Shown here one piece after another: positions 24,896 to 63,494 of a stretch of 64,000 bases of DNA (its first letter is position 1; every line of letters begins with the position of its first letter). Source of the stretch: Haliotis rufescens. Taxonomy: Eukaryota. The DNA lies in NCBI RefSeq assembly GCF_023055435.1, contig NW_025964235.1, forward strand, positions 930,001 to 994,000, in the 5' to 3' direction. The translations under genes and the position numbers were made by a program. The notes under the pieces are model-generated. The model ran no database searches. It was not told the DNA's origin and was given only the letters and a program-made list of their open reading frames with translations.

Positions 24896-25574
24896 CGTTC
24901 GACAATGTTATTGCGGATGCATTGTCTCGAGTTGTTTGAATGTGATCAGTTCTGACTACAAACATGATTTGCATATTTTGTAAACATTTATCTTATTCAA
25001 CATGTATAACATGTATTATTATGTTCTGTACTTGGCAAAGTTTGTCCTCACGATGTTAAAACTTTCTTTCTCGGAAGGGGGAGATCGCTATATGGCAGTG
25101 TATTTCATTGTTGAACAATGATTGTAACTGTGTTACATTGTAGAGATTCGGCAGACGCTCATTGTACATGTATTGTGTTTGGGCATTGATTAGTCGTCAG
25201 GAATGTGATACCGTTTCATCTTAGCAGTCGTCAGGAAGTTACTATGCTTTGATGCGAGTGTGGTGTGTAAACTTCCGGTATACCGCGGACGGTGATAGAA
25301 TGTTGTGGAGAATTCTGTCATGTTCTGGCACCTTAAGCTTTCGACTGGTTAGAGCACTGTGTGTAACATCCCAGTGGCTGGGGAGGTTATATATGTAGTT
25401 GGGCAAGAGCGTGTTTGCGTATCCCTCACACATGCTATCACATACGCATTTTCATCACGCCCAGACCAGTTTTCATGTTAGGATCGCTCATCATCCCTGA
25501 TATCACTGAAGCTTTAATATTATTACTACCACTGACTTTTGCTATTACCACTGTATTTTTGTATTTAATACTGA

Positions 25575-25855
25575 GTGAGTGAGTGAGTTTGGTTTAACGC
25601 CGCTTTTAACAGTATTTCAGTTATATCACGGCGTGTCAGCTTAATGTGGGAGGAAAGCCCGAAGTAATGCAGGTCTCAGACGTTTACCACTTCGGTGAAA
25701 CCCACGAGCACGGATACGGTGCTGACAAACCTAGAAACATAATCGGGGCGAACCGGGATTCGAACCTACAATCATAGGTTTCTGGCGTGCCCAAGGGAAG
25801 GCAACTCTGCACAGCGAATCGCGGCGCCTTAGACGACTGGGCCACCCGTGCCCCC
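25575..25855 (-). mobile_element. Full-length tRNA-derived SINE 'X' (left boundary of the triplication)
   Basis: Minus strand starts GGGGGCACGGGTGGCCCAGTCGTCTAAGGCGC (A box), has B box GGTTCGAATCC and an (ACTC)n tail; 14-bp TSD gtattt(a/t)atactga at 25561-25574 and 25856-25869. Confidence 0.88.
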
Positions 25856-26104
25856 GTATTTTATACTGACAACTACCATTTATTGCCATTGAATATTGTA
25901 TAACCACGCATTGTTTACTGCCATTGTAATCGCTGTGCAGTAATTTGTGTTCATATGTAAATTCAGTGAATTTTGTGGATCGTTTGTTGGTTTCACACTA
26001 AGTTCTTTTACGTACAGATTTCTGGATAAACATATTGTTTTCAATTTGGGAATCGACACGTAATGATATGAATCGGAATTTCTGCTCGGATTGTCAAAAC
26101 AAGG

Positions 26105-26345
26105 TAATTTGGCCAAGAAGTTTAAGTTCAGGTATATCGATGATCTGATATCGTTCAATCCATCAATCAGCCAATTCCCTTCCACTGAGTTACCCATCTA
26201 AACTAGAAACCAGTGAGACTGCTGAATCTGTTTCATATTTAAATATATGCATGAAATTTCAGAACCACAAAACACTCACCACGAGGCTGCATGACTGGAG
26301 GGATGACTTCAACTTTCGACTAGTAAACGTTCCCTTTATGGAAAG
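26105..26345 (+). pseudogene. Penelope-like RT remnant (copies at ~37410-37640 and ~51060-51275)
   Basis: FRYIDDLISFN..YPSKLE..SVSYL..TRLHDWRDDFNFRLVN(F)PFM matches PLE motifs FRYIDD and LYDKRDDFNF.IVNFPF. Confidence 0.8.
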
Positions 26346-26710
26346 GGTATTGTCGCATTTATTTATATGCTAAGCACAATTAGAGACGTTCGTGATGTGT
26401 TTCTCCAGGCACTTCAAATATGACTCTCAAGTTGCTGCCATCGTCACTTGGGCAGACAATACATTCATCTACTTCCAGATTTGCAGCATACCCACGTAGA
26501 CGCGGAGACGTTGATTTACCGTGACATTGCGTCAGCGTTATTTGCGGTTAAACAAAACTGTTTCATGGGCACCTGATAGCTAAACAGTCATTATGCGCTG
26601 TTCACATTAGAAAACAACACACAACACGTGTGTGAGTATCATGGTCCGAAGAAGCACTCAATCATCTGGTCTAGATTCGATTACTCACAGACTGACGTCA
26701 TATCTACTGC

Positions 26711-26872
26711 CGACAACACATATGGGATCTCGACAACACACATGGGAACTCGACAACACATATGGGAACTCGACAATACATATGGGAACTCGACAACACA
26801 TATGGGAACTCGACAACACATATGGAAACTCGACAACACATATGGGAACTCGAACAACACATATGGAAACTG
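26711..26872. repeat. 20/21-bp minisatellite (unit B 38004-38244, unit C 51636-51757)
   Basis: Unit cgacaacacatatgggaact. Confidence 0.95.
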
Positions 26873-26989
26873 GTGAAATAAAAATGAAGATGTAATGACA
26901 ATAAATGTCTGAAAAATTTATTTCGGTTGTGTAGATCAATATCATGCACGACACCTTGATGGTATAATGTTGATTAACTTGTGCATGAT

Positions 26990-27300
26990 TGCCCTTGGCA
27001 TTGCCCGCCATTACGCCCGAAGAGCTACCCAGACTGGGATCAACGTATCGCTGCCCAGTCTAATATCCATTCATAATAACGAAATCAGTTCGCTTGCCAT
27101 GTGTGATACTTTCCCCATACCGATCATGGTCAAGAATTGTTGCCTTGGCCAATCCCAATCTTTGCCGGCTGTGGTAAGCTGTAATGGTCACACCCTTCAC
27201 AGGACGCCTTGCTTTCAGGCGGGCTGCACAGAGTCAGCTTTTATCTGTAGAGTCGCATTCCTGTTATTGTACGGAATCCACTATTGACAGCAGATTTCAA
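26990..27300 (-). pseudogene. Possible decayed Tc1 transposase fragment (also in B and C)
   Basis: Minus strand gives ARLKARRPVKGVTITAYHSRQRLGLAK, like Tc1 'L.ARRP..G..LT..HR..RL.WA'. Confidence 0.5.
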
Positions 27301-27340
27301 TCTATTGCGTGGCATAATGTAATGAGACGATCTTATCCAG

Positions 27341-27920
27341 GTGACACATCATGTCAATCTCCTCATTGACACGTCATGTCAATCTCCTGATTGACACGTC
27401 ATGCCAATCTCATTAGTGACACGTGATGTCAATCTCCTCATTCACACGTCATTTCATTCTCCTTAGTGACACGTCATGTCAGTCTCCTTAGTGACACGTC
27501 ATGTCATTCTCCTCATTGACACATCATGTCAATCTCCTTAGTGACACGTCATGTCATTCTCCTTAGCGACACGTCATGTCAATCTCCTTAGTGACACGTC
27601 ATGTCATTCTCCTTATTGACACGTCATGTAATTCTCCTTAGTGACACGTCATGTCAATCTCCTTAGTGACACGTCATGTCATTCTCATTGACACGTCATG
27701 CCAATCTCCTTAGTGACACGTCATGTCAATCTCCTTAGTGACACGTCATGCCAATCTCCTGAGTGAGACGTCATGTCATTCTCCTCATTGACACATCATG
27801 CCGATCTCCTTAGTGACACGTCATGTCAATCTCCTCATTTACACGTCATGCCAATCTCCTTAGTGACACGTCATGTCAATCTCCTCATTGACACGTCATG
27901 TCAATGTCCTTAGTGACAAG
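27341..27920. repeat. 25-bp minisatellite downstream of the TRIM stop (unit B 38816-39668, unit C 52321-52798)
   Basis: Unit tgacacgtcatgtcaatctccttag. Confidence 0.95.
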
Positions 27921-28280
27921 TCCGGAAAATTATATATTCATTAAGATTAACTTCTGGTCCTGATCGCAAATAACATAAATTTACAAACTTGCTTTACAGA
28001 ATCATTTGTAATCAGTATAACGCCATGAAGGGATGCGTAAAAACCCAGGAAGAATGTGAGAAATCTGTTGTCGAAATAGGAAATTCCATATGCAACAGAT
28101 ATAACAGAACTATTTTTACCACCAATATTTCCCTTTCCTTGAAATCCACTGTCAATGAACAATCCCGAGCTACTTAAAAATGCTGATGTGTATATTCGCC
28201 ACGTTGTTCTCAAGAAAACATTCCACTGATAATATGAATAAAATGGAGCTTAATGCTTCTCAACTGTTTGCTTCATAGCT

Positions 28281-30197
28281 TCATACGGTGTATTTATTTA
28301 TCCCATCTTTAGCATCAATCACATACAGTGATCCCTCCTCATCGAAAGCAACATGACTGGGACAATGCAGCCCATCACGTTTTGTTTTGTACTGAAGACA
28401 TTTTTTACCACTTGAGCTATAAACGCGGACTCCTCCCAAATGGTAGTCCGCAGCGAAAATGGTTCCATCACGTGACACACAAGTCCCATTGGGTTTCCAC
28501 CCAGTATCATATTCCCTACTGCTCCACCTGTCCTTCCCTCCACTTGATAGGACTCTTAGACTTCCACTTCCCCATTCACTCATGACTATATCCCCTTCAG
28601 GGGTGACTGACAGAGACGCCAGGGGGAACCGGATGCTGCAGTCTAAATACTTCTTCAGCGTGCCATCCAGGTTGTAGACGTGAAATCTTTTGTCACCAGG
28701 AATATTGCCAACCACAATCCCAACATCGTCAGACGCAGCTAGACTGTATGTGAAGGGTAGACCTTCATCTGGTTTATTCTTGTTCAGTTTGACCTTTGTT
28801 CGTAGATGACCCTTTAAAGTGAAAATACACAAATAATTCTCACTGACCACAGCAATGATGTCCCCAGCAACAGCAATTGCACGGGGATAGAATCCATCCA
28901 CGGTGATTTCTTGTTTCAACTTACCACAAGAGTTGATCATCTTGACCTTTTTATTGGCTAGATCTGATATCAACAGCCCAGCACCGAAACTGTATGCCGT
29001 TCCTTTGATGTTAGGGTTCTTTGTATCACCTTTAAATTTTGCAGAAAATGTTCTTTGGAATTTCATATTGTATCTCGATGGAATAGATATGGTCTGTGAT
29101 ACACTGGCTTCACTCTGTGTTGTCTGCTTTTTGTCCTGTTTCTCGTTCTGTTCATCATCCTTTGCAACAGTCAATGCATCCGTCTTGTGAATAGCCATGG
29201 CATGTCCTTTGAGCTGTTGGAGTCTGTCCACAATGGTCGTCTTCAGCATCAGTAACTCGTCATCCTTGCCTGTCTCCAGGATGCTGTCACAGAAGTCAAC
29301 ACAACTGCCAATCCTATTTTTCTGTTGCGAGAGTTCTTGTAACATGGTGTTGTGTTCCTTCTCTATTTCTTTCGTTTCAGTGGAAAGTTTTCTCAGTGAA
29401 TCGTGTTGTCTGCTTTTTATTATGGCAATTTCTCGTTCCGCAGTTTCTTCAATGCGAGATGTTTTTAATTCTCTCTTTTTTTTTAATGCTTTTGTCAAAG
29501 ATAAGATACTCATTTCTTGTTTGGAAACTTCCTTGAATTCTTTGCGAATGATCTCAACCTTAGACTTCATCATTGACTTCAAAAAGCTTACAGCTTCTGT
29601 GATAGGTTGAGTGTTGTGGTCCTTGTGGAGAAAAATAACGCATGCTATACAGACTGGTAAATGACAAGATTGGCAAAAGTATTCCACATCTTTGTCCTGG
29701 TGCTGTTGACATTGAATTCTCTGTAACTGTCTGAACGTTTCATCATGCAGTCCTTCCCTGAGGTCTCCTAAAGAAACAATCTGATGGCCATGTGTTTGGG
29801 TTGAAGCATTGTGTCCATCGGAACAGTCTGTACAGAGGCCATCGCCGCAGTTGAGACACTTCATTTCTGCTGGGGAGGATCGTCCTTTCAACCCACATGG
29901 CGTGCATTGCATTGACTTGGCTGTCTTAGATCTTACAAGTTCAGCGAGTCCATTGATGAAGAAATTATTCTTGAAGGAATCTGCCTCAACTGAAATTGGT
30001 TCTCGACACTCTGGACAGAGTGCTGGTCTTTGTTCAGACTGATGTGACTCTGTGCGCGCGCATATGCACCTAAAGCAGAAGGAATGGAGGCAGGGCAGGA
30101 TTCTGGCATCTGTGATCAATTCTTGACAGATGCCACAAGTCAGGAAGTCATTGTGGTGTAAATCAACAACTGATCGATCTGGTAACGTTCCGGCCAT
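28281..30197 (-). CDS. TRIM-family E3 ligase paralog 3 (unit A), 638 aa
   Basis: Intact ORF with RING, two B-boxes, coiled coil and NHL-like repeats; acceptor tttctttttttcAG|ccaagATG. Confidence 0.93.
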   Translation of the reverse strand: MAGTLPDRSVVDLHHNDFLTCGICQELITDARILPCLHSFCFRCICARTESHQSEQRPALCPECREPISVEADSFKNNFFINGLAELVRSKTAKSMQCTPCGLKGRSSPAEMKCLNCGDGLCTDCSDGHNASTQTHGHQIVSLGDLREGLHDETFRQLQRIQCQQHQDKDVEYFCQSCHLPVCIACVIFLHKDHNTQPITEAVSFLKSMMKSKVEIIRKEFKEVSKQEMSILSLTKALKKKRELKTSRIEETAEREIAIIKSRQHDSLRKLSTETKEIEKEHNTMLQELSQQKNRIGSCVDFCDSILETGKDDELLMLKTTIVDRLQQLKGHAMAIHKTDALTVAKDDEQNEKQDKKQTTQSEASVSQTISIPSRYNMKFQRTFSAKFKGDTKNPNIKGTAYSFGAGLLISDLANKKVKMINSCGKLKQEITVDGFYPRAIAVAGDIIAVVSENYLCIFTLKGHLRTKVKLNKNKPDEGLPFTYSLAASDDVGIVVGNIPGDKRFHVYNLDGTLKKYLDCSIRFPLASLSVTPEGDIVMSEWGSGSLRVLSSGGKDRWSSREYDTGWKPNGTCVSRDGTIFAADYHLGGVRVYSSSGKKCLQYKTKRDGLHCPSHVAFDEEGSLYVIDAKDGINKYTV

Positions 30198-31081
30198 CTT
30201 GGCTGAAAAAAAGAAACATATTTCAATAGAAAGTTGTCTCTATGATGTCAGACTGAAATATTAAGAGACATTGTTTGTGGTCATTGTGGATTGGTTTGGT
30301 ATATACTGGCGGGAAAGAGTATCTGCTTCATATACAGTGGTGTAAATGCTACGTTATTTAAAAAAAACACCAAAAACCCAAATATCATATTTGGTCATTT
30401 GTCTGATCAAAGTATTATCAAAACCCATACCAGGTAACAGAAGACAGAGGGACACGCCCCAAAATAGTGGTAGTGATACAACTTAATTAACAATGTCAAT
30501 ATCGGATCTGACCACCACTTGCGTTGATACATGCGAGGCAGCGGCAGTGTACTGAATACACCAAATGATTAAAAACAGCCTGGGTGATGTTGTTCGAAGT
30601 GCCAACCAAATATTGGCCCATCTGAGTGGGCCCTCACTGGCTGGTTCTGATCTTGTCGTAGGCGTCAATCCATCTCATCCCAGGCATGTACAAAGTGGGG
30701 GAGAGGTCTGGAGGAACATCCGACCATGACAGTACAGCAATGTCATGCTGCCTCAAAAAGCCTATTACAACATGTGCAAAACATGGGCGGGCATTATCCT
30801 GCTACAACGAGACGCTACGTCCCTACATTTGCACAAACGGTAGGACGGTGCATTGATAGATGCATTCAGAATAAATATATTTTTATGAAGCACAGTTTCT
30901 TTTTTTCCGTCAGTATATTTACTATTGTGTTCAGACAGACTCTTAATAAGGAGTGTGCGTGTCTGCAACCAAATCAAAAACCAGCATTTCACTTTTACAG
31001 GTCAGACTTAACTCATACCAACATATAAGATGAGTGAGCATAAGATATATGGATGAACAACTTCTTTATTACAATAAGAAA

Positions 31082-31119
31082 CAACGTTTCGGTGTAGGTT
31101 CTAACACCGTTATCAAGCA
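31082..31119 (-). ncRNA. Penelope-type minimal hammerhead-like motif (same sequence in C 55671-55708; 11-nt deletion in B near 42575)
   Basis: Minus strand GC UUGAUAA C GGUGU-uagaaccu-ACACC GAAAC GUU G, followed by AAUAAA; stem I is weak. Confidence 0.45.
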
Positions 31120-32191
31120 AGTGAGTATAGTTGACAAGTATATATACAGGTTGCAGGCAGTTTTTATACAGTAGAGTAGATATCAGATGTAGATAATAGA
31201 GTAGATATCAGATGTAGATGATAGAGTAGATATCAGATGTAGCTACACTGGAGTGGAGAAGCTTGTTATGTACATCTTATCCTTAGTACTCAAACTTCAA
31301 TACCTCAAAGAAACATATAAGATGGTTGTCAGCAAGACTCTTGGTAGGGTATTGCTTTCCTTATATACAGCGTATACACGACAGAATTTGGGATTCCTGA
31401 CCAATAATTCACCAATTTTGGTTTTTGAGTGAGTTAGTCCGTCATCTCGGTTTAATGCCGGGCTGAAAAGTATTTTAGTTAGCAAGGCGTTTCAGTTGAC
31501 AAGCCAAGGGACATGATTAGGTTGAAGTTGGGATTTCAATGGACCCTTGCGTGGCAAAGACAGACACCCCGCTGAGAGAATTGCGTTGCCACAGAGACAT
31601 GCGTAGGGGTGTTTCCATGGGGAGCGTCTCCGACCCACCTCCACACTATTGACTATAGTGTGTGTTGCACAGCTCTGTTGACTGTTATGAAGCCTCCAGA
31701 CAGAAGTGTGCAATATCCACCATCATAAATCCATCTCATGTTACGTACAAAGTAACATGTTACGTACCCAGTAACATGTATATACATGTCACNNNNNNNN
31801 NNNNNNNNNNNNNNNNNNNNNNNNNNNNNNNNNNNNNNNNNNNNNNNNNNNNNNNNNNNNNNNNNNNNNNNNNNNNNNNNNNNNNNNNNNNNNNNNNNNN
31901 NNNNNNNNNNNNNNNNNNNNNNNNGACACACAGTCACACTACATGCATGTTCTCGCCTACCTGCTCCATCGATCGTCCTAACATAAGGGATACGTCGAAA
32001 ACTCTTACTCTGAAGGCGGCTGATACGTGACTAGGCAGTCACGTGACTATGCTGTTGCATTATGTGCTTTGATACAATCAGACTAACTAGAGAGATAGTA
32101 ACTAGCGAGATAAATTAGAGATTTTACAATGGTAACACATGAATACACAATGCCATTATGAATACACAATGCCATTTAGAAAGTGGTCAAA

Positions 32192-32354
32192 TGTAACACG
32201 TTATATTTGGGATAACACTTTCATAGTAAAGCACAGATTCTCGTACTTTTCTTGGGTTGAGTCCCGTCCGGGATTCGAACCCACTCAGCCAAGAAAAGTA
32301 CGAGAATCTGTTCTTTACTAAGAAAGTGTTATCCCAAATATAACATTTGTTACA
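32192..32354. mobile_element. Foldback element with ~70-bp arms and a B-box-containing loop (unit B 43695-43859, unit C 56823-56987)
   Basis: TGTAACA..gttatatttgggataacactttc..gagt / actc..gaaagtgttatcccaaatataac..TGTTACA; loop cccgtccgggattcgaaccc. Confidence 0.85.
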
Positions 32355-32747
32355 ATTGGTAGTGGTGGTATTTTGTAATAGATACAAGAAGTATTACTAT
32401 TTTTTCGGGTGTTCAAGAGACTTGAGCAATATGTGACACAAGTAAAAGGGTACTACGTCAGGCTAACATTTCAGATAATAGGATCATTGGGATGACTAAA
32501 AAAGGCATAATGCGTGTTCGGTTATGTCAAAAAGCCACCAAGAGTTACTGCCCTTTTGGAGGGGGTAGGACACGCACATTTCCAGGACATTCAGTACGAG
32601 GCAACAAAGTCGCAGGGCTGAATATCCAAAGGAATCAATGATCAAGACAAGAAAATGTAATTTGGAAACCAATATCAGCAGCAAACAAAACCAACTTACA
32701 GGTGTACTACAGCCATTAAAACGTTCATGATGGAGTGGCTGCACGGT

Positions 32748-33595
32748 TAGGTTGAGGTGGTTGTGAGGGTAGGGATTGTATAAGGTGGGGTGGTTGTGAG
32801 GGTAGGGTTTGTATAGGTTTTGGGTGGCTGTACGGGTAGTGTTTGTATAAGGTGGGGTTACTGTGAGGGTAGGGTTTGTATGAGTTGGGGTGACTGTGAG
32901 GGTAGGGTCTGTATAGGTTGGAGGCTGTGAGGGTGGTGTTTGTATGAGGTGGGGTGGCTGTGAGGGTGGGGTTTGTATGAGGTGGGGTGGCTGAGAGGGT
33001 GGGGTTTGTATGAGGTGGGGTGGCTGTGAGGGTAGGGTTTGTATGAGGTGGGGTGGCTGAGAGGGTAGGGTTTGTATGAGGTGGGGTGGCTGTGAGGGTA
33101 GGGTTGTATGAGGTGGGGTGGCTGAGAGGGTGGGGTTGTATGAGGTGGGGTGGCTGAGAGGGTAGGGTTTGTATGAGGTGGGGTGGCTGAGAGGGTGGGG
33201 TTGTATGAGGTGGGGTGGCTGTGAGGGTGGGGTTTGTATGAGGTGGGGTGGCTGAGAGGGTGGGGTTGTATGAGGTGGGGTGGCTGTGAGGGTGGGGTTT
33301 GTATGAGGTGGGGTTTGTATGAGGTGGGGTGGCTGAGAAGGTGGGGTTTGTATGATGTGGGGTGGTTGTGGGTGTAGGGTGTGTATGAGGTGGGGTGGCT
33401 GTGAGGCTGGGGTTTGTATAGGTTGGAGGCTCTGAGGGTCGGGTTGGTAAGGGTTAGGGTGGCTATGAGGGTTGGGTTTGCATGACTTGGGATAGCCGTG
33501 GGGGTAGGGTTTGTTTGAGGTGGAGTGGTTGTGGGGGTTGGGTTTGTATGAGGTGGAGTGGTTGTGGGGGTTGGGTTTGTATGAGGTGGGGAGGC
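32748..33595. repeat. G-rich 33-bp minisatellite, unit A (~0.85 kb)
   Basis: Unit gagggtggggtttgtatgaggtggggtggctgt. Confidence 0.93.
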
Positions 33596-33619
33596 TAGAC
33601 TGAAACTGACATTTCTACA

Positions 33620-34135
33620 ATCACTTACTTCGTCAAAGCTTAATCAGATGTCCTAGCGACATAATCACTTACCATTTACTTAGCAACATTAGATTTCCAC
33701 AACTCTACGACAGTGTTGATCAAGCTCATACCAGCTTCCCGGTTACTCTGCCGGTATCATTGCGATAGTTTTGAGAGCTCCGCCAACGGAGGAGGCTTGA
33801 GTGTAAACGTGTAATCACTTCCTGTAAGGGAGCANNNNNNNNNNNNNNNNNNNNNNNNNNNNNNNNNNNNNNNNNNNNNNNNNNNNNNNNNNNNNNNNNN
33901 NNNNNNNNNNNNNNNNNNNNNNNNNNNNNNNNNNNNNNNNNNNNNNNNNNNNNNNNNNNNNNNNNNNNNNNNNNNNNNNNNNNNAGTTTTAAAATATATA
34001 AAAAAACGAAAACTGTTTTCCTTGGACATTTGTCTGCGAGAAATAGCACATTATTTTTCCTACGCTGCGATGCAAATGTAATTTCTTCCAGTAAAGAAAG
34101 GAGCTTGATTATTTTTTCCCCATGAAAATCCCCTC
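33620..34135 (-). promoter_or_regulatory. Candidate non-coding exon 1 and promoter of the triplicated TRIM (unit B ~47390-48000, unit C ~57670-58126)
   Basis: Two minus-strand GTAAGT donors (33623-33628, 33667-33672), ETS-like CAGGAAGTG (33816-33824), IRF-like AAAACGAAAACT (34003-34014), kB-like GGGGATTTTC (34124-34133). Motif-level evidence only. Confidence 0.4.
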
Positions 34136-34199
34136 AATCCCATCCCTACTGAGAATCAAATGATTGCTCCCTAACTACATATATGACAGTTATTTTAAT

Positions 34200-34320
34200 G
34201 CGGGAGGCTGGCGGTTCGAACCCCACATGGGTAGATTGTGTGAATTCTTTATTATGTCCCCCGTCTTGATATTGCTGTAAATATTGCTACAAGCGGCGTA
34301 TTACCCAACTCACTCAACTC
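34200..34320 (+). mobile_element. Short tRNA-derived SINE family 3 remnant (copies at ~48066-48170 and ~58192-58312)
   Basis: B box ggttcgaacccc, then acatgggta..gatattgctg..aatattgcta..gcggcgta and an (actc) tail. Confidence 0.65.
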
Positions 34321-34699
34321 CCAGAATCACTTAGGAGGTGTATTAAACACTTAAATTTAGATAGATTAAATCTATAGAGATTAAATGAACAACATATGTT
34401 AAAATATCATAAATATAAACCCGAAGGGACAATGAGTAACTATATTATGTTTGAGTGTGTATTTCCAGGATGTGCTGAAGCACAACTGAATGTCTACGTC
34501 AGGATCCCTGAACACACTATTCACAATCACGTCTTGTATCAATACGTCAACAAGAACCAGATAACAGGACATAGAACATTAGGTACTAAAATCATTCTAT
34601 CAGAACGTGTACGTGGAACACAGGATAGGACACAGAACATTAGATATTGTCATCTGTCAGATTGTAACTTAAAAACGTAGAATAGGACAGACTACATCA

Positions 34700-50538: not shown

Positions 50539-50818
50539 GTGAGTGAGTGAGTTGGGTTTAACGCCGCTTTTAACAGTATTCCAGTTATATCGAGGCGTGT
50601 CAGCTTAATGTGGGAGGAAAGCCCGAAGTAATGCAGGTCTCAGACGTTTACCACTTTTACCACGTTTACCCACGAGCACGGGTACGGTGCTGACAAACCT
50701 AGAAACATAATCGGGGCGAACCGGGATTCGAACATACAATCATAGGTTTCTGGCGTGCCCAAGGCAACTCTGCACAGCGAATTGCCGCGCCTTAGACGAC
50801 TGGGCCACCCGTGCCCCC
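50539..50818 (-). mobile_element. Chimeric junction SINE (B/C boundary)
   Basis: Left flank gacagcgacatgtga (50524-50538), right flank gtattttatactga (50819-50832). Confidence 0.88.
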
Positions 50819-52869
50819 GTATTTTATACTGACAACTGCCATTTATTGCCATTGAATATTGGACTACCACTCTATTGTTTATCGCCCTTGTAATCGCCGT
50901 GCAGTAATTTGTGTGGATATGTAAATTCAGTGAATTTGTGTTTCACACTAAGTTCATTTACGTACAGATTTCTGGATAAACATATTGTTTCAATTTGAGA
51001 ATCGACACGTAATAATAAGAATAGGAATTTCTGCTCTGATTGTCAAAACAAGGTAATTTGGCCAAGAAGTTAAAGTTCAGGTATATCGATGATCTGATAT
51101 CGTTAAATCCATCAATCAGCCAATACCCTTCCACTGAGTTACCCATCATAACTAGAAACCAGTGAGACTGCTGAATCTGTTTCATATTTAGATGTATGCA
51201 TGACATTTCAGAACCACAAAACACTCTCCACGAGGCTGCATGAATAGCGGGATGACTTCAACTTTCCCTTTATGGAAAGGGTATTGTCGCATTTATTTAT
51301 ATGATAAGCCCAATTACAGACGTTCGTGATGTGTTTCTCCAGGCTCTTCAAATATGACTCTCAAGCTGCTGCCGTCGTCACTTGGGCAGACAATACATTC
51401 ATCTATTTCCAGATTTGCAGCATACTCACGACCCGTAGACGCTGATTTACCGTGACATGGCGTAAGCGTTATTTGCGGTTAAACAAAACTGTTTCATGGG
51501 CACCTGATAGCTAAACAGTTATTGTGAGCTGTTCACATTAAAAAAACAACACGTGTGTGAGTATCATGGTCCGAAGAAGCACTCAATCATCTGGTCTAGA
51601 TTCGATTACTCACAGACTGCCGTCATATCTACTGCCGACAACACATATGGGAACTCGACAACACATATGGGAACTCGACAACACATATGGGAACTCGACA
51701 ACACATATGGGAACTCGACAACACATATGGGAACTCGAACAACACATATGGGAACTGGTGAAATGAAAATGAAGATGTAATGACAATAAATGTCTGTAAA
51801 ATTTATTTCGGGAGTGTAGATCAATATCTGTATCCACCATGTCGGGCGACACATGCACGACTCCTTGATGGTATACTGTTGATTAACTTGCACATGGTTG
51901 CCCTTGGTATTGGACGCCATTACGCCTGAAGAGCTGCCCAAACTGGGGTCAACGTATCGCTGCCCAGTCAGTTCGCTTGTCATGTGTGATACTGCCCCCA
52001 TACCGACCATGGTCAAGAATTGTTGCCCTGGCCAATCCCAATCTTTGCCGCCTGTGGTAAGCTGTAATGGTCACACCCTTCACAGGACGCCTTGCTTTCA
52101 GGCGGGCTGCACAGAGTCAGTTTTTATCTGTAGAATCGCATTCCTGTTATTGTACGGAATCCACTATTGACAGCAGATTTCAATCTATTGCGTGGCATAA
52201 TGTAATGAGACGATCTTATCCAGGTGTCGTATTTTTAGGCCTGCCACGTCCAGGTCTCATTGTAACCCTCTCCGTTTGACGGTACTTGTCTCACAGAAAT
52301 TACACATTTTTATTTGCCAAACATGTCATTCTCCTCATTGACATGTCATGCAAATCTCCTTAGTGACACGTCATGTCAATCTCCTCATTGACACATCATG
52401 TCAATGTCCTTAGTGACACATCATGTCAATCTCCTCATTGACACGTCATGCCAATCTCCTTAGTGACACGTCATGCCAATCTCCTCATTGACACGTCATG
52501 CCAATCTCCTTAGTGACACGTCATGCCAATCTCCTCATTGACACGTCATGTCAATCTCCTCATTGACACGTCATGTCAATCTCCTTAGTGACACGTCATG
52601 CCAATCTCCTCATTGACACGTCATGTCAAACTCCTCATTGACACGTCATGTCAATGTCCATAGTGACACGTCATGTCAATCTCTTTACTGACACGTCATG
52701 TCAATCTCCTTAGTGACACGTCATGTCAATCTCCTCATTGACACGTCATGCCAATCTCCTTAGTGACACGTCATGTCAATCTCCTTAGTGACACGTCACG
52801 TTGTTCTCAAGAAAACATTCCACTGATAATATGAATGAAATGGAGCTTAAAGCTTCTCAACTGTTTGCT

Positions 52870-54786
52870 TCATACGGTGTATTTATTTATCCTATCTTTA
52901 GCATCAATCACATAGAGTGATCCCTCCTCATCGAAAGCAACATGACTGGGATAATGCAGCCCATCACGTATTGTTTTGTACTGAAGACATTTTTTACCAC
53001 TTGAGCTATAAACGAGGACTCCTCCCCAATCGTAGTCCGCAACGAAAATGGTTCCATCACGTGACACACAAGTCCCATTGGGTTTCCACCCAGTATCATA
53101 TTCCCAACTGCTCCACCTGTCCTTCCCTCCACTTGATAGGACTCTTAGACTTCCACTTCCCCATTCACTCATGACTATATCCCCTTCAGGGGTGACGGAC
53201 AGGGACGCCAGGGGGAACCGGATGCTGCAGTCTATATACCTCTTCATCGTGCCCTCCAGGTTGTAGACGTGAAGTCTTTTGTCACCAGGAATATTGCCAA
53301 CCACAATCCCAACATCGTCAGACGCAGCTAGACTGTATGTGAAGGGTAGACCTTCGTCTGGTTTAGTCTTGTTCAGTTTGACCTTTGTTCGTAGATGACC
53401 CTTTAAAGTGAAAATACACAAATAATTCTCACTGACCACAACAATGATGTCCCCAGCAACAGCAATTGCACGGGGATAGAATCCATCCACGGTGATTTCT
53501 TGTTTCAACTTACCACAAGAGTTGATCATCTTGACCTTTCTATTGGCTAGATCTGATATCAACAGCCCAGCACCGAAACTGTATGCCGTTCCTTTGATGT
53601 TAGGGTTCTTTGTATCACCTTTAGATTTTGCAGAAAATGTTCTTTGGAATTTCATATTGTATCTTGATGGAATAGATCTGGTCTGTGCTTCACTGGCTTC
53701 ACTCTGTGTTGTCTGCTTTTTGTCCTGTTTCTCGTTCTGTTCATCATCCTTTGCAACAGTCAATGCATCCGTCTTGTGAATAGCCATGGCATGTCCTTTG
53801 AGCTGTTGGAGTCTGTCCATAATGGTCGTCTTCAGCATCAGTAACTCGTCATCCTTGCCTGTCTCCAGGATGCTGTCACAGAAGTCGACACAACTGCCAA
53901 TCCTATTTTTCTGTTGCGAGAGTTCTTGTAACATGGTGCTGTGTTCCTTCTCTATTTCTTTCATTTCAGTGGAAAGTTTTCTCAGTGAATCGTGTTGTCT
54001 GCTTTTTATTTTTGCAATTTCTCGTTCCGCATTTTCTTCAATGCGAGATGTCTCTAATTCTCTTTTTTGTTTTAATGCTTTTGTCAAAGATAAGATACTC
54101 ATTTCTTGTTTGGAAACTTCCTTGAATTCTTTGCGAATGATCTCAACCTTAGACTTCATCATTGACTTCAAATGGCTTACAGTTTCTGTGATAGGTTGAG
54201 TGTTGTGGTCCTTGTGGAGAAGAATAACGCATGCTATACAGACTGGTAAATGACAAGATTGGCAAAAGTATTCCACATCTTTGTCCTGGTGCTGTTGACA
54301 TTGAATTCTCTGTGACTTTCTGAACGTTTCATCATGCAGTCCTCCCCTGAGGTCTGCTACAGAAACAATCTGATGACAATGTGTTTGGGTTGAAGCATTG
54401 TGTCCATCGGAACAGTCTGTACAGAGGCCATCGCCGCAGTTGAGACACTTCATTTCTGCTGGGGAGGATCGTCCTTTCAACCCACATGGCGTGCATTGCA
54501 TTGACTTGGCTGTCTTAGATCTTACAAGTTCAGCGAGTCCATTGATGAAGAAATTATTCTTGAAGGAATCTGCCTCAACTGAAATTGGTTCTCGACACTC
54601 TGGACAGAGTGCTGGTCTTTGTTCAGACTGATGTGACTCTGTGCGCGCGCATATGCACCTAAAGCAGAAGGAATGGAGGCAGGGCAGGATTCTGGCATCT
54701 GTGATCAATTCTTGACAGATGCCACAAGTCAGGAAGTCATTGTGGTGTAAATCAACAACTGATCGATCTGGTAACGTTCCGGCCAT
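52870..54786 (-). CDS. TRIM-family E3 ligase paralog 5 (unit C), 638 aa
   Basis: Intact ORF colinear with paralogs 3 and 4; A-like RING, mostly B-like downstream. Confidence 0.93.
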   Translation of the reverse strand: MAGTLPDRSVVDLHHNDFLTCGICQELITDARILPCLHSFCFRCICARTESHQSEQRPALCPECREPISVEADSFKNNFFINGLAELVRSKTAKSMQCTPCGLKGRSSPAEMKCLNCGDGLCTDCSDGHNASTQTHCHQIVSVADLRGGLHDETFRKSQRIQCQQHQDKDVEYFCQSCHLPVCIACVILLHKDHNTQPITETVSHLKSMMKSKVEIIRKEFKEVSKQEMSILSLTKALKQKRELETSRIEENAEREIAKIKSRQHDSLRKLSTEMKEIEKEHSTMLQELSQQKNRIGSCVDFCDSILETGKDDELLMLKTTIMDRLQQLKGHAMAIHKTDALTVAKDDEQNEKQDKKQTTQSEASEAQTRSIPSRYNMKFQRTFSAKSKGDTKNPNIKGTAYSFGAGLLISDLANRKVKMINSCGKLKQEITVDGFYPRAIAVAGDIIVVVSENYLCIFTLKGHLRTKVKLNKTKPDEGLPFTYSLAASDDVGIVVGNIPGDKRLHVYNLEGTMKRYIDCSIRFPLASLSVTPEGDIVMSEWGSGSLRVLSSGGKDRWSSWEYDTGWKPNGTCVSRDGTIFVADYDWGGVLVYSSSGKKCLQYKTIRDGLHYPSHVAFDEEGSLYVIDAKDRINKYTV

Positions 54787-56378
54787 CTTGGCTGAAAAAA
54801 AGAAACATATTTCAATAGAAAGTTGTCTCTATGATGTCAGACTGAAATATTAAGAGACATTGTTTGCGGTCATTGTTGATTGGTTTGGTATATACTGGCG
54901 GGAAAGAGTATCTGCTTCATATTCAGTGGTGTAAATGCTACGTTATTTAAAAAAAACACCAAAAACCCAAATATCATATTTGGTCATTTGTCTGATCAAA
55001 GTATTATCAAAACCCATACCAGGTAACAGAAGACAGAGGGACACGCCCCAAAATAGTGGTAGTGATACAACTTAATTAACAATGTCAATATCGGATCTGA
55101 CCACCACTTGCGTTGATACATGCGAGGCAGCGGCAGTGTACTGAATACACCAAATGATTAAAAACAGCCTGGGTGATGTTGTTCGAAGTGCCAACCAAAT
55201 ATTGGCCCATCTGAGTGGGCCCTCACTGGCTGGTTCTGATCTTGTCGTAGGCGTCAATCCATCTCATCCCAGGCATGTACAAAGTGGGGGAGAGGTCTGG
55301 AGGAACATCCGACCATGACAGTACAGCAATGTCATGCTGCCTCAAAAAGCCTATTACAACATGTGCAAAACATGGGCGGGCATTATCCTGCTACAACGAG
55401 ACGCTACGTCCCTACATTTGCACAAACGGTAGGACGGTGCATTGATAGATGCATTCAGAATAAATATATTTTTATGAAGCACAGTTTCTTTTTTTCCGTC
55501 AGTATATTTACTATTGTGTTCAGACAGACTCTTAATAAGGAGTGTGCGTGTCTGCAACCAAATCAAAAACCAGCATTTCACTTTTACAGGTCAGACTTAA
55601 CTCATACCAACATATAAGATGAGTGAGCATAAGATATATGGATGAACAACTTCTTTATTACAATAAGAAACAACGTTTCGGTGTAGGTTCTAACACCGTT
55701 ATCAAGCAAGTGAGTATAGTTGACAAGTATATATACAGGTTGCAGGCAGTTTTTATACAGTAGAGTAGATATCAGATGTAGATAATAGAGTAGATATCAG
55801 ATGTAGATAATAGAGTAGATATCAGATGTAGCTACACTGGAGTGGAGAAGCTTGTTATGTACATCTTATCCTTAGTACTCAAACTTCAATACCTCAAAGA
55901 AACATATAAGATGGTTGTCAGCAAGACTCTTGGTAGGGTATTGCTTTCCTTATATACAGCGTATACACGACAGAATTTGGGATTCCTGACCAATAATCTA
56001 TTCACCAATTTTGGTTTTTGAGTGAGTTAGTCCGTCATCTCGGTTTAATGCCGGGCTGAAAAGTATTTTAGTTAGCAAGGCGTTTCAGTTGACAAGCCAA
56101 GGGACATGATTAGGTTGAAGTTGGGATTTCAATGGACCCTTGCGTGGCAAAGACAGACACCCCGCTGAGAGAATTGCGTTGCCACAATTGCGTAGGGGTG
56201 TTTCCATGGGGAGCGTCTCCGACCCTCCACACTATTGACTATAGTGTGTGTTGCACAGCTCTGTTGACTGTTATGAAGCCTCCAGACAGACATGTCACAA
56301 CACTGACCCCGATAAAAGGACAGCTGTAGCGTATGTGGTAGCCTCTCTCCCCCCCCCCCCCTCTCTCTCTCTCGCACG

Positions 56379-56423
<45 letters not shown>

Positions 56424-57397
56424 TATGAATGGAATACCGACCCGACACACAGTCACACCACATGCATGTTCTCGCCTACCTGCTCCATCCATCGTCCTAA
56501 CATAAGAGATACGTCGAAAACTCTTACTCTGAAGGCGGCTGATAAGTGACTCGGCAGTCTCGTGACTATGCTGTTGCATTATGTGCTTTGATACAATCAG
56601 ACGTCACCGCCCTGAGTATGCTCGTATGCCAGTCACATGAGAGAACTGAACAAGAGCGACATTGATACAAGTAATCTGTAGGTGTTACCGTCACGATGGT
56701 TGATGCGAGATGTTCCCGTATAAAACAATATAACTAGCGAGATAAATTAGAGATTTTACAATGGTAACACATGAATACACAATGCCATTATGAATACACA
56801 ATTCCTTTTAGAAGTGGTCAAATGTAACAAATGTTATATTTGGGATAACACTTTCTTAGTAAAGTACAGATTCTCGTACTTTTCTTGGGTTGAGTCCCGT
56901 CCGGGATTCGAACCCACTCAGCTAAGAAAAGTACGAGAATCTGTACTTTACTAAGAAAGTGTCATCCCAAATATAACATTTGTTACAAATGGTAACACAG
57001 CCGATATAAATCAGGAATTCTAAGGCATACAATTGTATTTAGTGGTGGCATTTCCTAATAGATACAAGAAGTATTTACTATATCTGTGAATGTTCAAGAG
57101 ACTTGAGCAATATGTGACACTAGTAAAAGGGTACTGCGTCAGGCTAACATTTCAGATAATATGATCATGGGCTGACTGAAAAGGCATAATGCGTGTTCTG
57201 TTATGTCAATAAGCCACCAAGAGTTACTGCCCTTAAGGAGGAAGTAAGACACGCACATTTCCAGGACATTCAGTACGAGACAACAAAGTCGTAGGGCTGA
57301 ATATCCAAAGGAATCAATGAGCAGGACAAAACCAACTTCCAGGTGTACTACAGCCATTGAAACGTTCATGATGGAATGGAGTGTCTGTGGCTGCACG

Positions 57398-57644
57398 GTT
57401 AGGTTGAGGTGGTTGTGGGGGTAGGGTTGGTATAGGTTAGGGCGGCTATGAGGGTGGGGTTTGCATGACTTGGGATAGCCGTGGGGGTAGGGTTTGTTTG
57501 AGGTGGAGTGGTTGTGGGGGTAGGGTTTGTTTGAGGTGGAGTGACTGTGAGGGTAGGGTTTGTTTGAGGTGGAGTGGTTGTGGGGGTTGGGTTTGTATGA
57601 GGTGGAGTGGTTGTGGGGGTTGGGTTTGTATGAGGTGGGGAGGC
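57398..57644. repeat. G-rich minisatellite, unit C (~0.25 kb)
   Basis: Only the diverged edge units remain. Confidence 0.9.
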
Positions 57645-57920
57645 TAGACTGAAACTGACGTTTCTACAATCACTTACTTCGTCAAAGCTTAATCAGATAT
57701 ACTAGCGACATAATCACTTACCATTTACTTAGCAACATTAGATTTCCCCAACTCTACGACAGTGTTGATCAAGCTCATACCAGCTTTCCGGTTACTCTGC
57801 CAGTATCATTGCGATAGTATAGAGAGCTCCGCCAACGGAGGAGGCTTGAGTGTAAACGTGTAATCACTTCCTGTAAGGGAGCAATCATTTCATATTCGTG
57901 TGTGTGGTGTGGTGTGGTGT

Positions 57921-57957
<37 letters not shown>

Positions 57958-59938
57958 TTTTGGGTACTCCAATATTAGTTTTAAAATATGAAAAAAAACG
58001 AAAACTGTTTTCCTTGGACATTTGTCTGCGAGAAATAGCACATTATTTTTCCTACGCTGCGATGCAAATGTAATTTCTTCCAGTAAAGAAAGGAGCTTGA
58101 TTATTTTTTCCCCCATGAAAATCCCCTCAATCCCAACCCTACTGAGAATCAAATGATTGCTCCCTAACTACATATATGACAGTTATTTTAATGCGGGAGG
58201 CTGGTGGTTCGAACCCCACATGGGTAGATTGTGTGAATTCTTTATTATGTCCCCCGTCTTGATAGTGCTGTAAATATTGCTACAAGCGGCGTATTACCCA
58301 ACTCACTCAACTCCAGGAATCACTTAGGAGGTGTATTAAACACTTAAATTTACTTAAAGTAGAGATTAAATGAACAACATATAGTATAAATATAAACCCG
58401 AAGGGACAATGAGTAAGTATATTATGTTTGAGTGTGTATTTCCAGGATGTGCTGAAGCACAACTGAATGTCTACGTCAGGATCCCTGAACACACTATTCA
58501 CAATCATGTCTTGTATCAATACGTCAACAAGAAACAGATAACAGGACATAGAACATTAGGTACTAAAATCATTCTATCAGAACGTGTACATGGAACACAG
58601 GATAGGACACAGAACATTAAATATTGTCATCTGTCAGATTGTAACTTAAAAACGTAGAATAGGACAGACTACATAAAATAATGTCATCTATCAGAATGTA
58701 ACTAAAGGACATGGAATAGGACATAGAACATCAAATGATGTCATCTATTCAGGACATCGAACATTAAATAATGTCATCTATTTCGGACATAGAACATCAA
58801 ATGATGTCATCTATTCAGGACATCGAACATCAAATAATGTCATCTATTCAGGACATCGAACATCAAATAATGTCATCTATTTCGGACATAGAACATCAAA
58901 TGATGTCATCTATTCAGGACATCGAACATCAAATAATGTCATCTATTTCGGACATAGAACATCAAATGATGTCATCTATTCAGGACATCGAACATTAAAT
59001 AATGTCATCTATTTAGGACATCGAACATTAAATAATGTCATCTATTCAGGACATAGAACATCAAATAATGTCATCTATTCAGGACATCGAAAAATTAAAT
59101 AATGTCATCTATTTAGGACGTGGTAATTCCAACGTTGTATTTTGACAATGTAAGGTATTAAGTCATCCTGTTAGCTTTGTGTAGACAGACACTGATGTGT
59201 GTCTTGCAGTTAACAGTAATTATGATGCGTCAACCCACCATTAGCATACATCTTTAACAAGCCAGCTCCCCACGCGGTGCGCAGCCATCGCTTGGATCTT
59301 CATCTCTACCTCGTGACATCATTATGAATGTTTTCATTAATTAACACTCACTAATAACGACGATGCTTTCCACTTCACATCATTAGTCAAAGGATGCAGA
59401 TGTTCTTTCTCCCACGTGCTGTTTGTTTTCATGGTAGGATTTATGCTTATTATCTTTCAAGTGAAAAACAAATACTAATTAAATATTCAAGTACTCCAGA
59501 CGTCATTACCGCGTGCGGATATTGTTGTCGCTTGCTGAAATTGGAAGATGGCACATTAATCAGTGGAGGGAGGGCTGCTGCAACAAGAACACAAGAAGAA
59601 GACTAACTGATTGAAAGCATCCAGAGTGGTTGGAACATACATTGCTTCGTTAACAACTTCTGGAAGTCGCGTGGTACATACAGACGCACAACCGTTATGC
59701 CGTCAGACACGTGTCAGTCATTGTCAGTCACACACTAAGCCACATGCCTGCATATCCATGCCTAGTTGGTCAATAAACAACCGTTGTAATCTTTATATTA
59801 ACGATTTGGAAATCGACGGCATCGTCGCAGTCGGTACAAAGACGAGTCGAGTGAAAACATTTGAAAGCAGAAACACCATCGGCGATTGCGGAGCACGAGC
59901 AGCACGTGCGCCCGTCTCGCGCTGACAGCGACATGTGA

Positions 59939-60227
59939 GTGAGTGGGTGGGTTGGGTTTAACGCCGCTTTTAACAGTATTCCAGTTATATCGCGGCGTGT
60001 CAGCTTAATGTGGGAGGAAAGCCCGAGGTGATGCAGGTCTCGGACGTTTACCACTTCGGTGAAACCCACGGATATGGTGCTGACAAACCTAGAAACATAA
60101 TCGGGGCGAACCGGGATTCGAACCCAAAATCATAGGTTTCTGGCGTGTCCAATGGACGCAACTCTGCACAACGAATCGCGGCGCCTTAGACTGGGCCGCG
60201 CCTTAGACTGGGCCGCCCGTGCCCCCC
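59939..60227 (-). mobile_element. Full-length tRNA-derived SINE 'Y' (right boundary of the triplication)
   Basis: Same family; perfect 15-bp TSD gacagcgacatgtga at 59924-59938 and 60228-60242. Confidence 0.88.
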
Positions 60228-60452
60228 GACAGCGACATGTGACGGACATCCAAACATTACTGCTGTGTGAGCCCACCGGGCACCACGGTGGTCAGGACAC
60301 GCTGATGTCAAGTCAACAATATATGATAACACTATATCAGTATGAGCGTCTGAGGGAGCATTGTACACCTGGTCGTATGTCAGCGTCCGCCCTCCCCACA
60401 CGGACAAAACTGTGGAGGACGAGGAGACACACATCACAACGATCGCTTCGAG

Positions 60453-62935: not shown

Positions 62936-63494
62936 CGACAGTAATGTAGTATGATTCTTTCATACGGTATGAGTGTGTGGGTGTTTGGTGAGACTATTAC
63001 GAATTCGTAAGGCAGGGTTTCGAGCGAAATTGGCCGAGAAATAAGTTCTATTTTTTTTAAAATCACACACACTTAATAGTAAAGGCTGTCATCGAGGGCT
63101 TCCGAAAGACTTCCAGAGATCTAGAAATGCCACCCTTACATATTTCTCCCTAAACGTAAAGTATCACACGCATACCAATCGTCAGACGACAGTACAGTGT
63201 CCATCAATGCATAAATCTACACGATAGTGTCGTTATTTCCAATGAAAACTTTCTACTTTCTACTGAACATATTTGTTGCGTGAAAAGTTTGCAGGATTAT
63301 GAACTTTATGCATGCAGGTTATATTTCGGCCCAACCAAATACGTGTTACATGCACTCTTTCGTCACAAGCAGAGCAGACGTCATCAGCCAGCTGTGGTGT
63401 TTTTCTCTTTGATTCTTGCTGATTTTATGTGTTGCGAAACCTTTCTAGAGATTTGACAATCCGACGCCTTTGGATATTCCGACCCCACAGTACA

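What the first reader, a model, noticed from the sequence alone, without database searches (positions are those of the whole stretch)
25561..60242. Swapped target-site duplications record SINE-SINE recombination that triplicated a whole TRIM gene
Seen: four same-orientation SINEs of one family bound three units. Outer SINE X is flanked on both sides by gtattt(a/t)atactga and outer SINE Y on both sides by gacagcgacatgtga. Both inner SINEs have Y's left flank and X's right flank. Established: non-allelic homologous recombination between two independent SINE insertions (as with Alu-Alu) yields exactly such chimeric elements. Inference: the ancestral locus was X-[TRIM gene]-Y. The inner SINEs share ttgggttt and attccag with Y but gaagtaatg with X, which places the crossover within roughly the leftmost 90 nt. 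The locus should behave as a copy-number accordion, including a reciprocal zero-copy allele.
Basis: partly seen in the sequence, partly recalled or inferred. Interest (0 to 1): 0.88.

Follow-up and report, generated by a model that had tools for sequence, protein, structure and literature searches.

The report
SINE-bounded triplication of abalone TRIM gene
In the red abalone genome, two separately inserted copies of a short mobile element (SINE) recombined with each other, and this duplicated and later triplicated a complete, intact TRIM-NHL ubiquitin-ligase gene; the footprints are very clean, but the mechanism is the familiar one known from human Alu elements.

Summary
Four same-orientation SINEs of one abundant family bound three tandem units of 9.1-13.4 kb.

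- **Flanks:** outer SINE X and outer SINE Y each have their own 14-16 nt target-site duplication. Both inner SINEs have Y's left flank and X's right flank, and no duplication of their own.
- **X is a real insertion:** five paralogous copies of an older repeat run unbroken through X's insertion site.
- **Inner SINEs are real DNA:** they share three derived changes absent from X, Y and 29 other family members. So they descend from one real chimeric element and are not an assembly mis-join.
- **Copy number and content:** the unit occurs only three times in the genome, all here. Units differ by 2-4%, and each carries an intact 638-aa RING/B-box/coiled-coil/NHL-propeller gene.
- **Later history:** relationships among the units are mosaic, which indicates later exchanges between them.

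Best reading: a homology-mediated SINE-SINE unequal exchange, followed by unit-unit exchange. This is the abalone (Haliotis rufescens) equivalent of Alu/Alu-mediated duplication, so a new member of a known kind.

Copy-number polymorphism remains untested. The scan held no earlier equivalent finding.

The parts
25089..25574 (.). Left half of an older interspersed repeat, ending in X's left target-site duplication (25561-25574). It occurs once in the window.
25575..25855 (-). Outer SINE X (281 nt). Its (TCAC)n tail lies at the low-coordinate end.
   Evidence: It is 96-97% identical to many genomic copies. It has its own 14-nt target-site duplication.
25856..36891 (.). Unit 1 (11,036 nt including two N runs). 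It starts with X's right target-site duplication (25856-25869) and the right half of the older repeat (to about 26069). It ends with a Y-left-type flank (36877-36891).
28281..30197 (-). TRIM-NHL gene copy 1, an intact single-exon ORF of 638 aa.
   Evidence: The exact protein is present in RefSeq for Haliotis rufescens.
36892..37167 (-). Inner chimeric SINE 1. It has Y's left flank and X's right flank and no target-site duplication of its own.
37168..50538 (.). Unit 2 (13,371 nt including one N run). It has the longest minisatellite arrays.
39747..41663 (-). TRIM-NHL gene copy 2, an intact ORF of 638 aa.
50539..50818 (-). Inner chimeric SINE 2. It has Y's left flank and X's right flank and no target-site duplication of its own.
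50819..59938 (.). Unit 3 (9,120 nt, no N run). It ends with Y's left target-site duplication (59924-59938).
52870..54786 (-). TRIM-NHL gene copy 3, an intact ORF of 638 aa.
59939..60227 (-). Outer SINE Y (289 nt). It is the most diverged of the four, with a 6-nt deletion and a 14-nt internal duplication.
60228..60242 (.). Y's right target-site duplication, followed by a flank that occurs once in the genome.

Best explanation
The ancestral red-abalone locus held one TRIM-NHL gene lying between two independent, same-orientation insertions of one SINE family, X and Y. A homology-mediated unequal exchange paired Y on one chromatid or homologue with X on the other. The crossover fell in the tail-proximal ~90 nt of the element. 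This produced X-unit-chimera-unit-Y. The chimera kept Y's left flank and X's right flank.

The single chimera then acquired three changes of its own. After that, a second unequal exchange between the now 9-13 kb homologous units (less likely between the chimera and an outer SINE) gave three units and two copies of the chimera. Further gene conversion or unequal exchange made the units mosaic, and the internal minisatellites changed length.

All three gene copies stayed intact and are diverging at the protein level.

**Shown:** the flank swap, the missing target-site duplications, the empty site for X, the X-like right part of the chimeras, the shared derived changes, the mosaicism and the intact ORFs.

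**Inferred:** the enzymology (meiotic crossing-over versus replication or annealing pathways), the order of the later events, and present-day copy-number variation.
For: - **Flank motifs** are at exactly the predicted 4+4 positions. The alignment shows in-register, full-length inner elements.
- **Flanks:** the outside flanks occur once, and the inner flanks are homologous to Y-left and X-right over hundreds of nt.
- **Target-site duplications:** 27/29 other family copies plus X and Y have their own, while the inner two have none.
- **Empty site for X:** five paralogous copies of an older repeat align uninterrupted from about 485 nt left to about 200 nt right of X's insertion point, with one copy of the duplicated motif.
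- **Polarised sites:** the inner SINEs share X's minority states at 25666, 25717 and 25767. They lack all nine Y-private changes to the right of 25662.
- **Shared derived changes:** the inner SINEs share a 9-nt replacement at 25691-25699, a 4-5-nt deletion at 25796-25800 and a C>T at 25820. None of these is in X, Y or the 29 other copies. An assembler joining X and Y reads could not have produced them.
- **Copy number:** the unit is present three times in the 1.33-Gb assembly, all at this locus. Each outside flank is present once.
- **Divergence:** units differ by 1.8-5.7% in unique segments and in the copy number of all four minisatellites.
- **Assembly quality (PMC9709998):** 50.8x HiFi coverage with a mean read length of 15 kb, longer than a unit, and 1.37% heterozygosity.
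- **Mosaicism:** site patterns are clustered, with 114 runs against 166 +/- 7 in shuffles and 0 of 10,000 shuffles as low.
Against: - No read-level or second-individual evidence could be obtained. The copy number of three rests on one haploid assembly.
- The left part of the chimeras carries only ancestral family states, so a Y-derived segment inside the element is not positively shown. The exchange could lie at the very tail.
- At site 25714, X and Y share A while both chimeras have the family's G.
- Site 25628 differs between the two chimeras.
- A block at 30368-31154 where units 1 and 3 agree against unit 2 is not predicted by one simple second crossover.
- Y has no paralogous empty site to test.
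Confidence: 0.8

Rival explanations
1. The substrates and product are the same, but the pathway is replicative or annealing-based. A template switch between the two SINEs during replication (FoSTeS/MMBIR), or a related homology-annealing repair, produced the duplication rather than a RAD51-type unequal crossover.
For: - The tract of near-identity available at the junction is short: at most about 91 nt, and 26-33 nt of perfect identity as the sequences stand now.
- In human genomes most homology-driven TE-mediated rearrangements have junction homology too short for classical NAHR, and these alternative pathways are proposed for them (PMC9675761).
Against: - Nothing in the sequence distinguishes the pathways.
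- There are no templated insertions or added complexity at the junctions. The chimeras are in register.
- The later mosaic exchanges between units show that ordinary homologous exchange operates at this locus.
Confidence: 0.12
2. The assembly overstates the copy number. The real haplotype carries two units and one chimeric SINE, and the assembler added a third unit from the other haplotype.
For: - The genome is highly heterozygous at 1.37%, and the primary assembly is one output of a partially phased dual assembly.
- No reads could be examined.
- Abalone genomes have regions where the two haplotype assemblies align poorly (PMC12627906).
Against: - The three units are about equally diverged from each other at 2-4%, above mean heterozygosity.
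- Each of the two chimeras has private changes.
- Minisatellite lengths differ in all three units.
- HiFi reads of about 15 kb span whole units.
- No extra haplotig copy of the unit or its flanks exists elsewhere in the assembly.
- Even if this rival were true, at least one chimeric SINE and one duplication would remain real.
Confidence: 0.05
3. The duplication was non-homologous (end-joining), and its two breakpoints happen to coincide with SINE ends. The inner SINE would then be a whole copy of X (or of Y) and not a recombinant.
For: In the left ~90 nt the inner SINEs show no derived state private to Y, so they could be X-derived throughout.
Against: - It needs both breakpoints to fall exactly at the equivalent ends of two homologous elements 9-13 kb apart, leaving an in-register, full-length element. 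That is very unlikely without homology.
- A whole-Y copy is excluded by nine Y-private changes absent from the inner SINEs and by three minority states the inner SINEs share with X.
Confidence: 0.03

Closest known systems
Alu/Alu-mediated rearrangements and TE-mediated rearrangements in human genomes, including duplications and multi-copy amplifications flanked by homologous TEs (PMC6071635; PMC9675761)
   Same: - Two same-orientation SINEs of one family, each with its own target-site duplication.
- The junction carries an in-register chimeric element with mismatched flanks.
- The product is a tandem duplication that can amplify further.
   Different: - The host is a vetigastropod mollusc.
- The SINE is an unrelated ~280-nt element with a (TCAC)n tail, not a 7SL-derived dimer.
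- The amplified segment is a complete 9-13 kb gene unit, far longer than the ~1 kb median of human TE-mediated duplications.
- The event is old enough (2-4% divergence) to show later evolution of the chimera.
Alu recombination-mediated deletion (PMC2041999)
   Same: It is the reciprocal product of the same exchange: a single chimeric element with the left flank of one parent and the right flank of the other.
   Different: Here the gain product is seen. The deletion allele (X-left flank, SINE, Y-right flank) was not found in the primary assembly and remains a prediction.
TRIM-NHL proteins (TRIM2, TRIM3, TRIM71/LIN-41, Brat, Mei-P26)
   Same: - RING and B-box are matched by Pfam.
- The model has a ~110-residue helix and a six-bladed NHL propeller.
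- The propeller superposes on solved TRIM2, TRIM3 and TRIM71 NHL domains with target TM-score 0.77-0.81.
   Different: - Only 15-20% identity to those NHL domains.
- No filamin domain.
- Intronless coding sequence.
- Member of a lineage-specific tandem cluster. RefSeq calls it TRIM56-like.
- The biochemical function is untested.

Membership tests
Homology-driven TE-mediated tandem duplication (Alu/Alu-type) | Two elements of one family in direct orientation bound the ancestral segment. | tested here: met
   X and Y have the same orientation and belong to the same family (257 matches, 17 mismatches and 3 gap events between them).
Homology-driven TE-mediated tandem duplication (Alu/Alu-type) | Each parental element is an independent insertion with its own target-site duplication. 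| tested here: met
   14 nt for X (1 mismatch) and 15-16 nt for Y. The empty site for X is confirmed in five paralogous repeat copies. For Y there is no paralogue to test.
Homology-driven TE-mediated tandem duplication (Alu/Alu-type) | The junction element lacks matching duplications and carries the left flank of the distal parent and the right flank of the proximal parent. | tested here: met
   for both inner SINEs.
Homology-driven TE-mediated tandem duplication (Alu/Alu-type) | The junction element is a full-length, in-register chimera whose sequence switches from one parent to the other. | tested here: inconclusive
   The element is in register and full length. The right ~190 nt is clearly X-type. 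The left ~90 nt carries only ancestral states, so a Y-derived part inside the element is not positively shown.
Homology-driven TE-mediated tandem duplication (Alu/Alu-type) | The structure is present in the DNA of the organism (reads or a second assembly). | not testable with these tools
The only indirect support is the derived changes private to the chimeras and the HiFi read length.
SINE (short, non-autonomous, LINE-mobilised retroposon) | Short element, high copy number, simple-repeat 3' tail, variable target-site duplications. | tested here: met
   The element is about 280 nt. There were at least 3,464 first-look candidates, and the 39 scored matches other than X itself were 96-97% identical. 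The tail is (TCAC)n, with 9-16 nt duplications in 27/29 copies.
SINE (short, non-autonomous, LINE-mobilised retroposon) | Head derived from a tRNA with pol III A and B boxes. | tested here: not met
   By eye the head has tRNA-like D-arm and T-arm motifs. ARAGORN calls nothing, even with relaxed settings, and Rfam gives no match at E<=1. So 'tRNA-derived' remains a lead. It is not the Haliotis MESC SINE, which ends in (CACCT)n.
TRIM-NHL E3 ligase | N-terminal RING finger. | tested here: met
   PF13445 scores 26.0 bits (cut-off 25.2) and PF00097 scores 23.0 bits (cut-off 21). The Cys/His ligands are invariant in 12 homologues.
TRIM-NHL E3 ligase | B-box zinc finger(s). | tested here: met
   PF00643 scores 36.3 bits (cut-off 24.1) over two stretches.
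TRIM-NHL E3 ligase | Coiled coil after the B-box. | tested here: met
   The AlphaFold2 model has a continuous helix at residues 199-309 followed by a helix at 312-345, with pLDDT of 76-90 over 201-300. Dimerisation was not tested.
TRIM-NHL E3 ligase | C-terminal six-bladed NHL beta-propeller. | tested here: met
   Pfam NHL scores 19.1 bits, just under the 20-bit cut-off. The model's residues 379-637 are all-beta, with pLDDT mostly above 90. They match TRIM2/TRIM3/TRIM71 NHL crystal structures at E 4e-17 to 1e-15 and target TM-score 0.77-0.81.

The most novel reading that the evidence does not exclude
The locus is a live copy-number accordion in red abalone. Haplotypes with zero, one, two, three or more units would segregate today, seeded by the SINE pair and driven onward by unit-unit exchange. 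The amplified TRIM-NHL copies would be diversifying under selection in the last propeller blades. That would be an invertebrate counterpart of the fast-evolving vertebrate antiviral TRIM clusters, with the founding molecular event still readable at nucleotide resolution.
Probability: 0.3. Interest if true: 0.55.

Novelty: new member of a known kind. Interest (0 to 1): 0.4.

Why it matters
Lineage-specific expansion of TRIM and other innate-immunity gene families is a hallmark of mollusc genomes, but the molecular events that start such tandem arrays are rarely visible.

Here the founding event can be read base by base: two SINE insertions, one exchange between them, then amplification by exchange between the new units. 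It shows that a young, abundant abalone SINE family supplies recombination substrates in the way Alu does in primates.

It also gives a concrete, PCR-testable structural-variant locus in a species of conservation and aquaculture interest. Three intact, protein-diverging copies sit in red abalone, where the black abalone annotation has one.

The mechanism itself is textbook, so the value is as a clean documented case and not as a new principle.

Tried and rejected
- **Read-level tests.** I did not try to get round either. Read depth, junction-spanning reads, expression of the three copies and the other haplotype are therefore all untested.
- **tRNA origin of the SINE head.** ARAGORN and Rfam at E<=1 gave nothing.
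- **Naming the SINE.** The Haliotis MESC SINEs described in PMC4758252 end in (CACCT)n and contain (CA)n, so they are not this family. The family name was left undetermined.
Rejected as evidence because both are the ancestral family states.
- **A simple two-step history** (one SINE-SINE exchange plus one unit-unit crossover). This predicts that unit 2 resembles unit 3 on the left and unit 1 on the right. The observed pattern is a finer mosaic with a block where units 1 and 3 agree against unit 2, so more exchanges are needed.
- **Segment 31925-32700 of unit 1.** It aligned poorly next to the N run (about 10% apparent distance) and was left out of the divergence and runs statistics.
- **Deletion allele or extra haplotig.** None was found in the primary assembly.
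- **Earlier notes of the scan.** They held no equivalent case.
Full report
**Source.** The window is G000:C457:930001-994000 of a 1.33-Gb, 615-contig assembly. The exact protein of the first TRIM copy is a RefSeq protein on a 3.19-Mb record that also encodes a named Haliotis rufescens (red abalone) protein. The size and scaffold number match the published HiFi/Omni-C primary assembly. That paper reports 50.8x HiFi coverage, a mean read length of 15 kb, 1.37% heterozygosity and 154 gaps genome-wide (PMC9709998).

**The observation.**
The X-type is at 25561, 25856, 37168 and 50819. The Y-type is at 36877, 50524, 59924 and 60228.
- An alignment of the four elements with flanks shows four ~280-nt elements of one family in one orientation: X at 25575-25855, in1 at 36892-37167, in2 at 50539-50818 and Y at 59939-60227.
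- X is flanked on both sides by its 14-nt motif (one mismatch), and Y by its 15-16-nt motif. Both inner elements have Y's left flank and X's right flank.
- Homology ends at the elements. The 600 nt left of X and right of Y occur once in the window. The 300 nt left of in1, in2 and Y are 96-98% alike, and the 300 nt right of X, in1 and in2 are 88-90% alike.

**Are these real SINE insertions?**
- The element is very abundant: at least 3,464 first-look candidates, with the 39 scored matches other than X itself 96-97% identical.
- In 27 of 29 other copies I found a private 9-16-nt target-site duplication abutting the (GTGA)n end and the other end. X and Y behave the same way, while the two inner elements have none under the same criterion.
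- X sits inside an older interspersed repeat. Five other genomic copies of that repeat align without interruption from about 485 nt left to about 200 nt right of X's insertion point, and they contain the duplicated motif once.
- So X's left flank and the start of the unit were once contiguous. The sequence to the right of both inner SINEs begins in the middle of a repeat whose left half exists only to the left of X.
- Y has no paralogous site to test.

**Which parent do the inner SINEs resemble?** I polarised every site at which the four differ against 29 other family members.
X alone is derived there, so sharing them with Y carries no information.
- The informative sites are three family-polymorphic positions (25666, 25717, 25767) where X and both inner SINEs share the minority state and Y has the majority state.
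- In addition there are nine Y-private events to the right of 25662, including a 6-nt deletion and a 14-nt duplication, and both inner SINEs lack all of them.
- So the right ~190 nt of the inner SINEs is X-type, and the exchange lies between the tail and 25666, a span of about 91 nt.
- Two sites do not fit simply. At 25714, X and Y share A while both inner SINEs have the family's G. At 25628, in1 has X's state and in2 has Y's, in a CpG context.

**One chimera, later copied.** The inner SINEs share three derived events found in neither parent nor in any of the 29 other copies: a 9-nt replacement at 25691-25699, a 4-5-nt deletion at 25796-25800 and a C>T at 25820. Each also has two or three private changes. 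They are therefore copies of a single chimeric element that existed for some time before the second amplification. They also cannot be the product of an assembler joining X reads to Y reads.

**The units.**
- Unit 1 is 25856-36891, unit 2 is 37168-50538 and unit 3 is 50819-59938, giving 11.0, 13.4 and 9.1 kb.
- They differ in the copy number of four internal minisatellites. The values for units 1/2/3 are 8/12/6 for the 20-bp array, 23/34/19 for the 25-bp array, about 25/95/7 for the first 33-bp array and 39/33/12 for the second.
- They differ by 1.8-5.7% in unique segments.
- The unit is found three times in the whole assembly, all here. Each outer flank is found once. So there is no stray haplotig and no deletion allele in the primary assembly.
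- Which unit is the odd one out changes in blocks along the unit: 114 runs against 166 +/- 7 in shuffles, with none of 10,000 shuffles as low. One block, at 30368-31154, has units 1 and 3 agreeing against unit 2.
- One SINE-SINE exchange plus one unit-unit crossover does not explain this pattern. Further conversion or exchange among units is needed.

**The N runs.**
- They lie inside units, at 31793-31924, 33835-33984 and 47683-47856. The nearest run is about 1.6 kb from an ORF and about 2.7 kb from a SINE junction.
- For the runs at 33835-33984 and 47683-47856, sequence on both sides is collinear with gap-free unit 3, which has a (GT)n microsatellite at that place.
- For the run at 31793-31924, the right side is collinear from the first base after it. 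The 88 nt immediately left of it did not align to the other units, but sequence beyond that does. Unit 3 has (CA)n at that place.
- With 154 gaps in the whole assembly, the runs are more likely masked stretches than gaps. I did not fill them and nothing here depends on them.

**The gene.**
- Each unit holds one intact single-exon ORF of 638 aa on the minus strand: 28281-30197, 39747-41663 and 52870-54786.
- Pfam finds RING and B-box above threshold and NHL just below it.
- An AlphaFold2 model has mean pLDDT 74.6, with the propeller mostly above 90. It shows RING, B-box, a 110-residue helix and a 24-strand C-terminal domain.
- That C-terminal domain matches solved TRIM2, TRIM3 and TRIM71 NHL propellers at target TM-score 0.77-0.81.
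- The copies differ at 27-36 residues, with dS 0.022-0.034 and dN/dS of 0.55, 1.00 and 0.93.
- Of the 46 variable residues, 19 fall in the last 140 aa (p = 0.004).
- The closest protein elsewhere is a single H. cracherodii (black abalone) protein, 93.3-93.6% identical to each copy. It is the only non-rufescens member of the 90% cluster.
- Seventeen residues separate the H. cracherodii protein from all three copies, while each copy has 8-13 private changes. This fits amplification after the split from black abalone, but it depends on annotation and could also reflect concerted evolution.

**Mechanism and comparison.**
- The anatomy is that of homology-driven TE-mediated duplication as described for Alu: direct-orientation parents, an in-register chimeric element and mismatched flanks. 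Multi-copy amplifications flanked by homologous TEs are also described for Alu (PMC9675761; PMC6071635). The reciprocal product is known as Alu recombination-mediated deletion (PMC2041999).
- Whether the first exchange was a meiotic crossover or a replication or annealing event cannot be told from the sequence.
- I therefore file this as a new member of a known kind. It is a clean, nucleotide-resolved example in a mollusc that affects a complete gene of an expanding family.

**Limits.** No reads, no second haplotype and no orthologous DNA could be examined. The copy number of three and any present-day polymorphism rest on one assembly, plus the argument from chimera-private mutations and read length.

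Noticed in passing
window 39747-54786 (protein P0035): The RefSeq model LOC124140732 (1,756 aa) joins the unit-3 ORF (aa 36-672, 100% identical) to the unit-2 ORF (aa 1119-1756, 100% identical). The 446 Pro/Thr-rich residues between them have an 11-aa period, that is, a translation of the 33-bp minisatellite. This is probably a read-through annotation artefact.
   Followed up: partly
window 457-2376 and 7085-9082, minus strand: Two older, intact TRIM-NHL paralogues (639 and 665 aa, 47-53% identical to the triplicated gene) lie on the same strand. The triplication therefore sits inside an older tandem TRIM cluster.
   Followed up: partly
window 2431-2600: A partial copy (171 nt, 91% identity) of the same SINE family, in the same orientation, lies just upstream of the first older TRIM paralogue.
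   Followed up: no
window 28281-28700 (residues 499-638 of each copy): Amino-acid differences among the three copies are enriched in the last 140 residues of the NHL propeller: 19 of 46 variable sites, binomial p = 0.004. dN/dS is near 1 for two of the three pairs.
   Followed up: partly
window 10255-11456, 11846-13402, 17636-18232, 63487-63800: Large minisatellites with periods of 51, 36, 51 and 38 bp. They create long spurious ORFs in several frames.
   Followed up: no
window 19037-20353 and 20968-21369, plus strand: A fragment of a non-LTR retrotransposon with a reverse-transcriptase domain (PF00078, E 8e-9). It lies next to the N run at 18821-18994.
   Followed up: no
L002 and L006 (G000:C556, about 31.70 and 31.82 Mb): Two copies of the SINE lie 122 kb apart and have the same 16-nt target-site duplication and the same flanks. 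They therefore lie within a larger segmental duplication that post-dates the insertion.
   Followed up: no
L022 and L026: Two further family copies lack a detectable target-site duplication. They could be decayed copies or other recombination products.
   Followed up: no
window 25714 and 25628 (and the equivalent sites in the other SINEs): Two sites do not fit a simple chimera. At 25714, X and Y share A while both inner SINEs have the family's G. At 25628, in1 matches X and in2 matches Y.
   Followed up: partly
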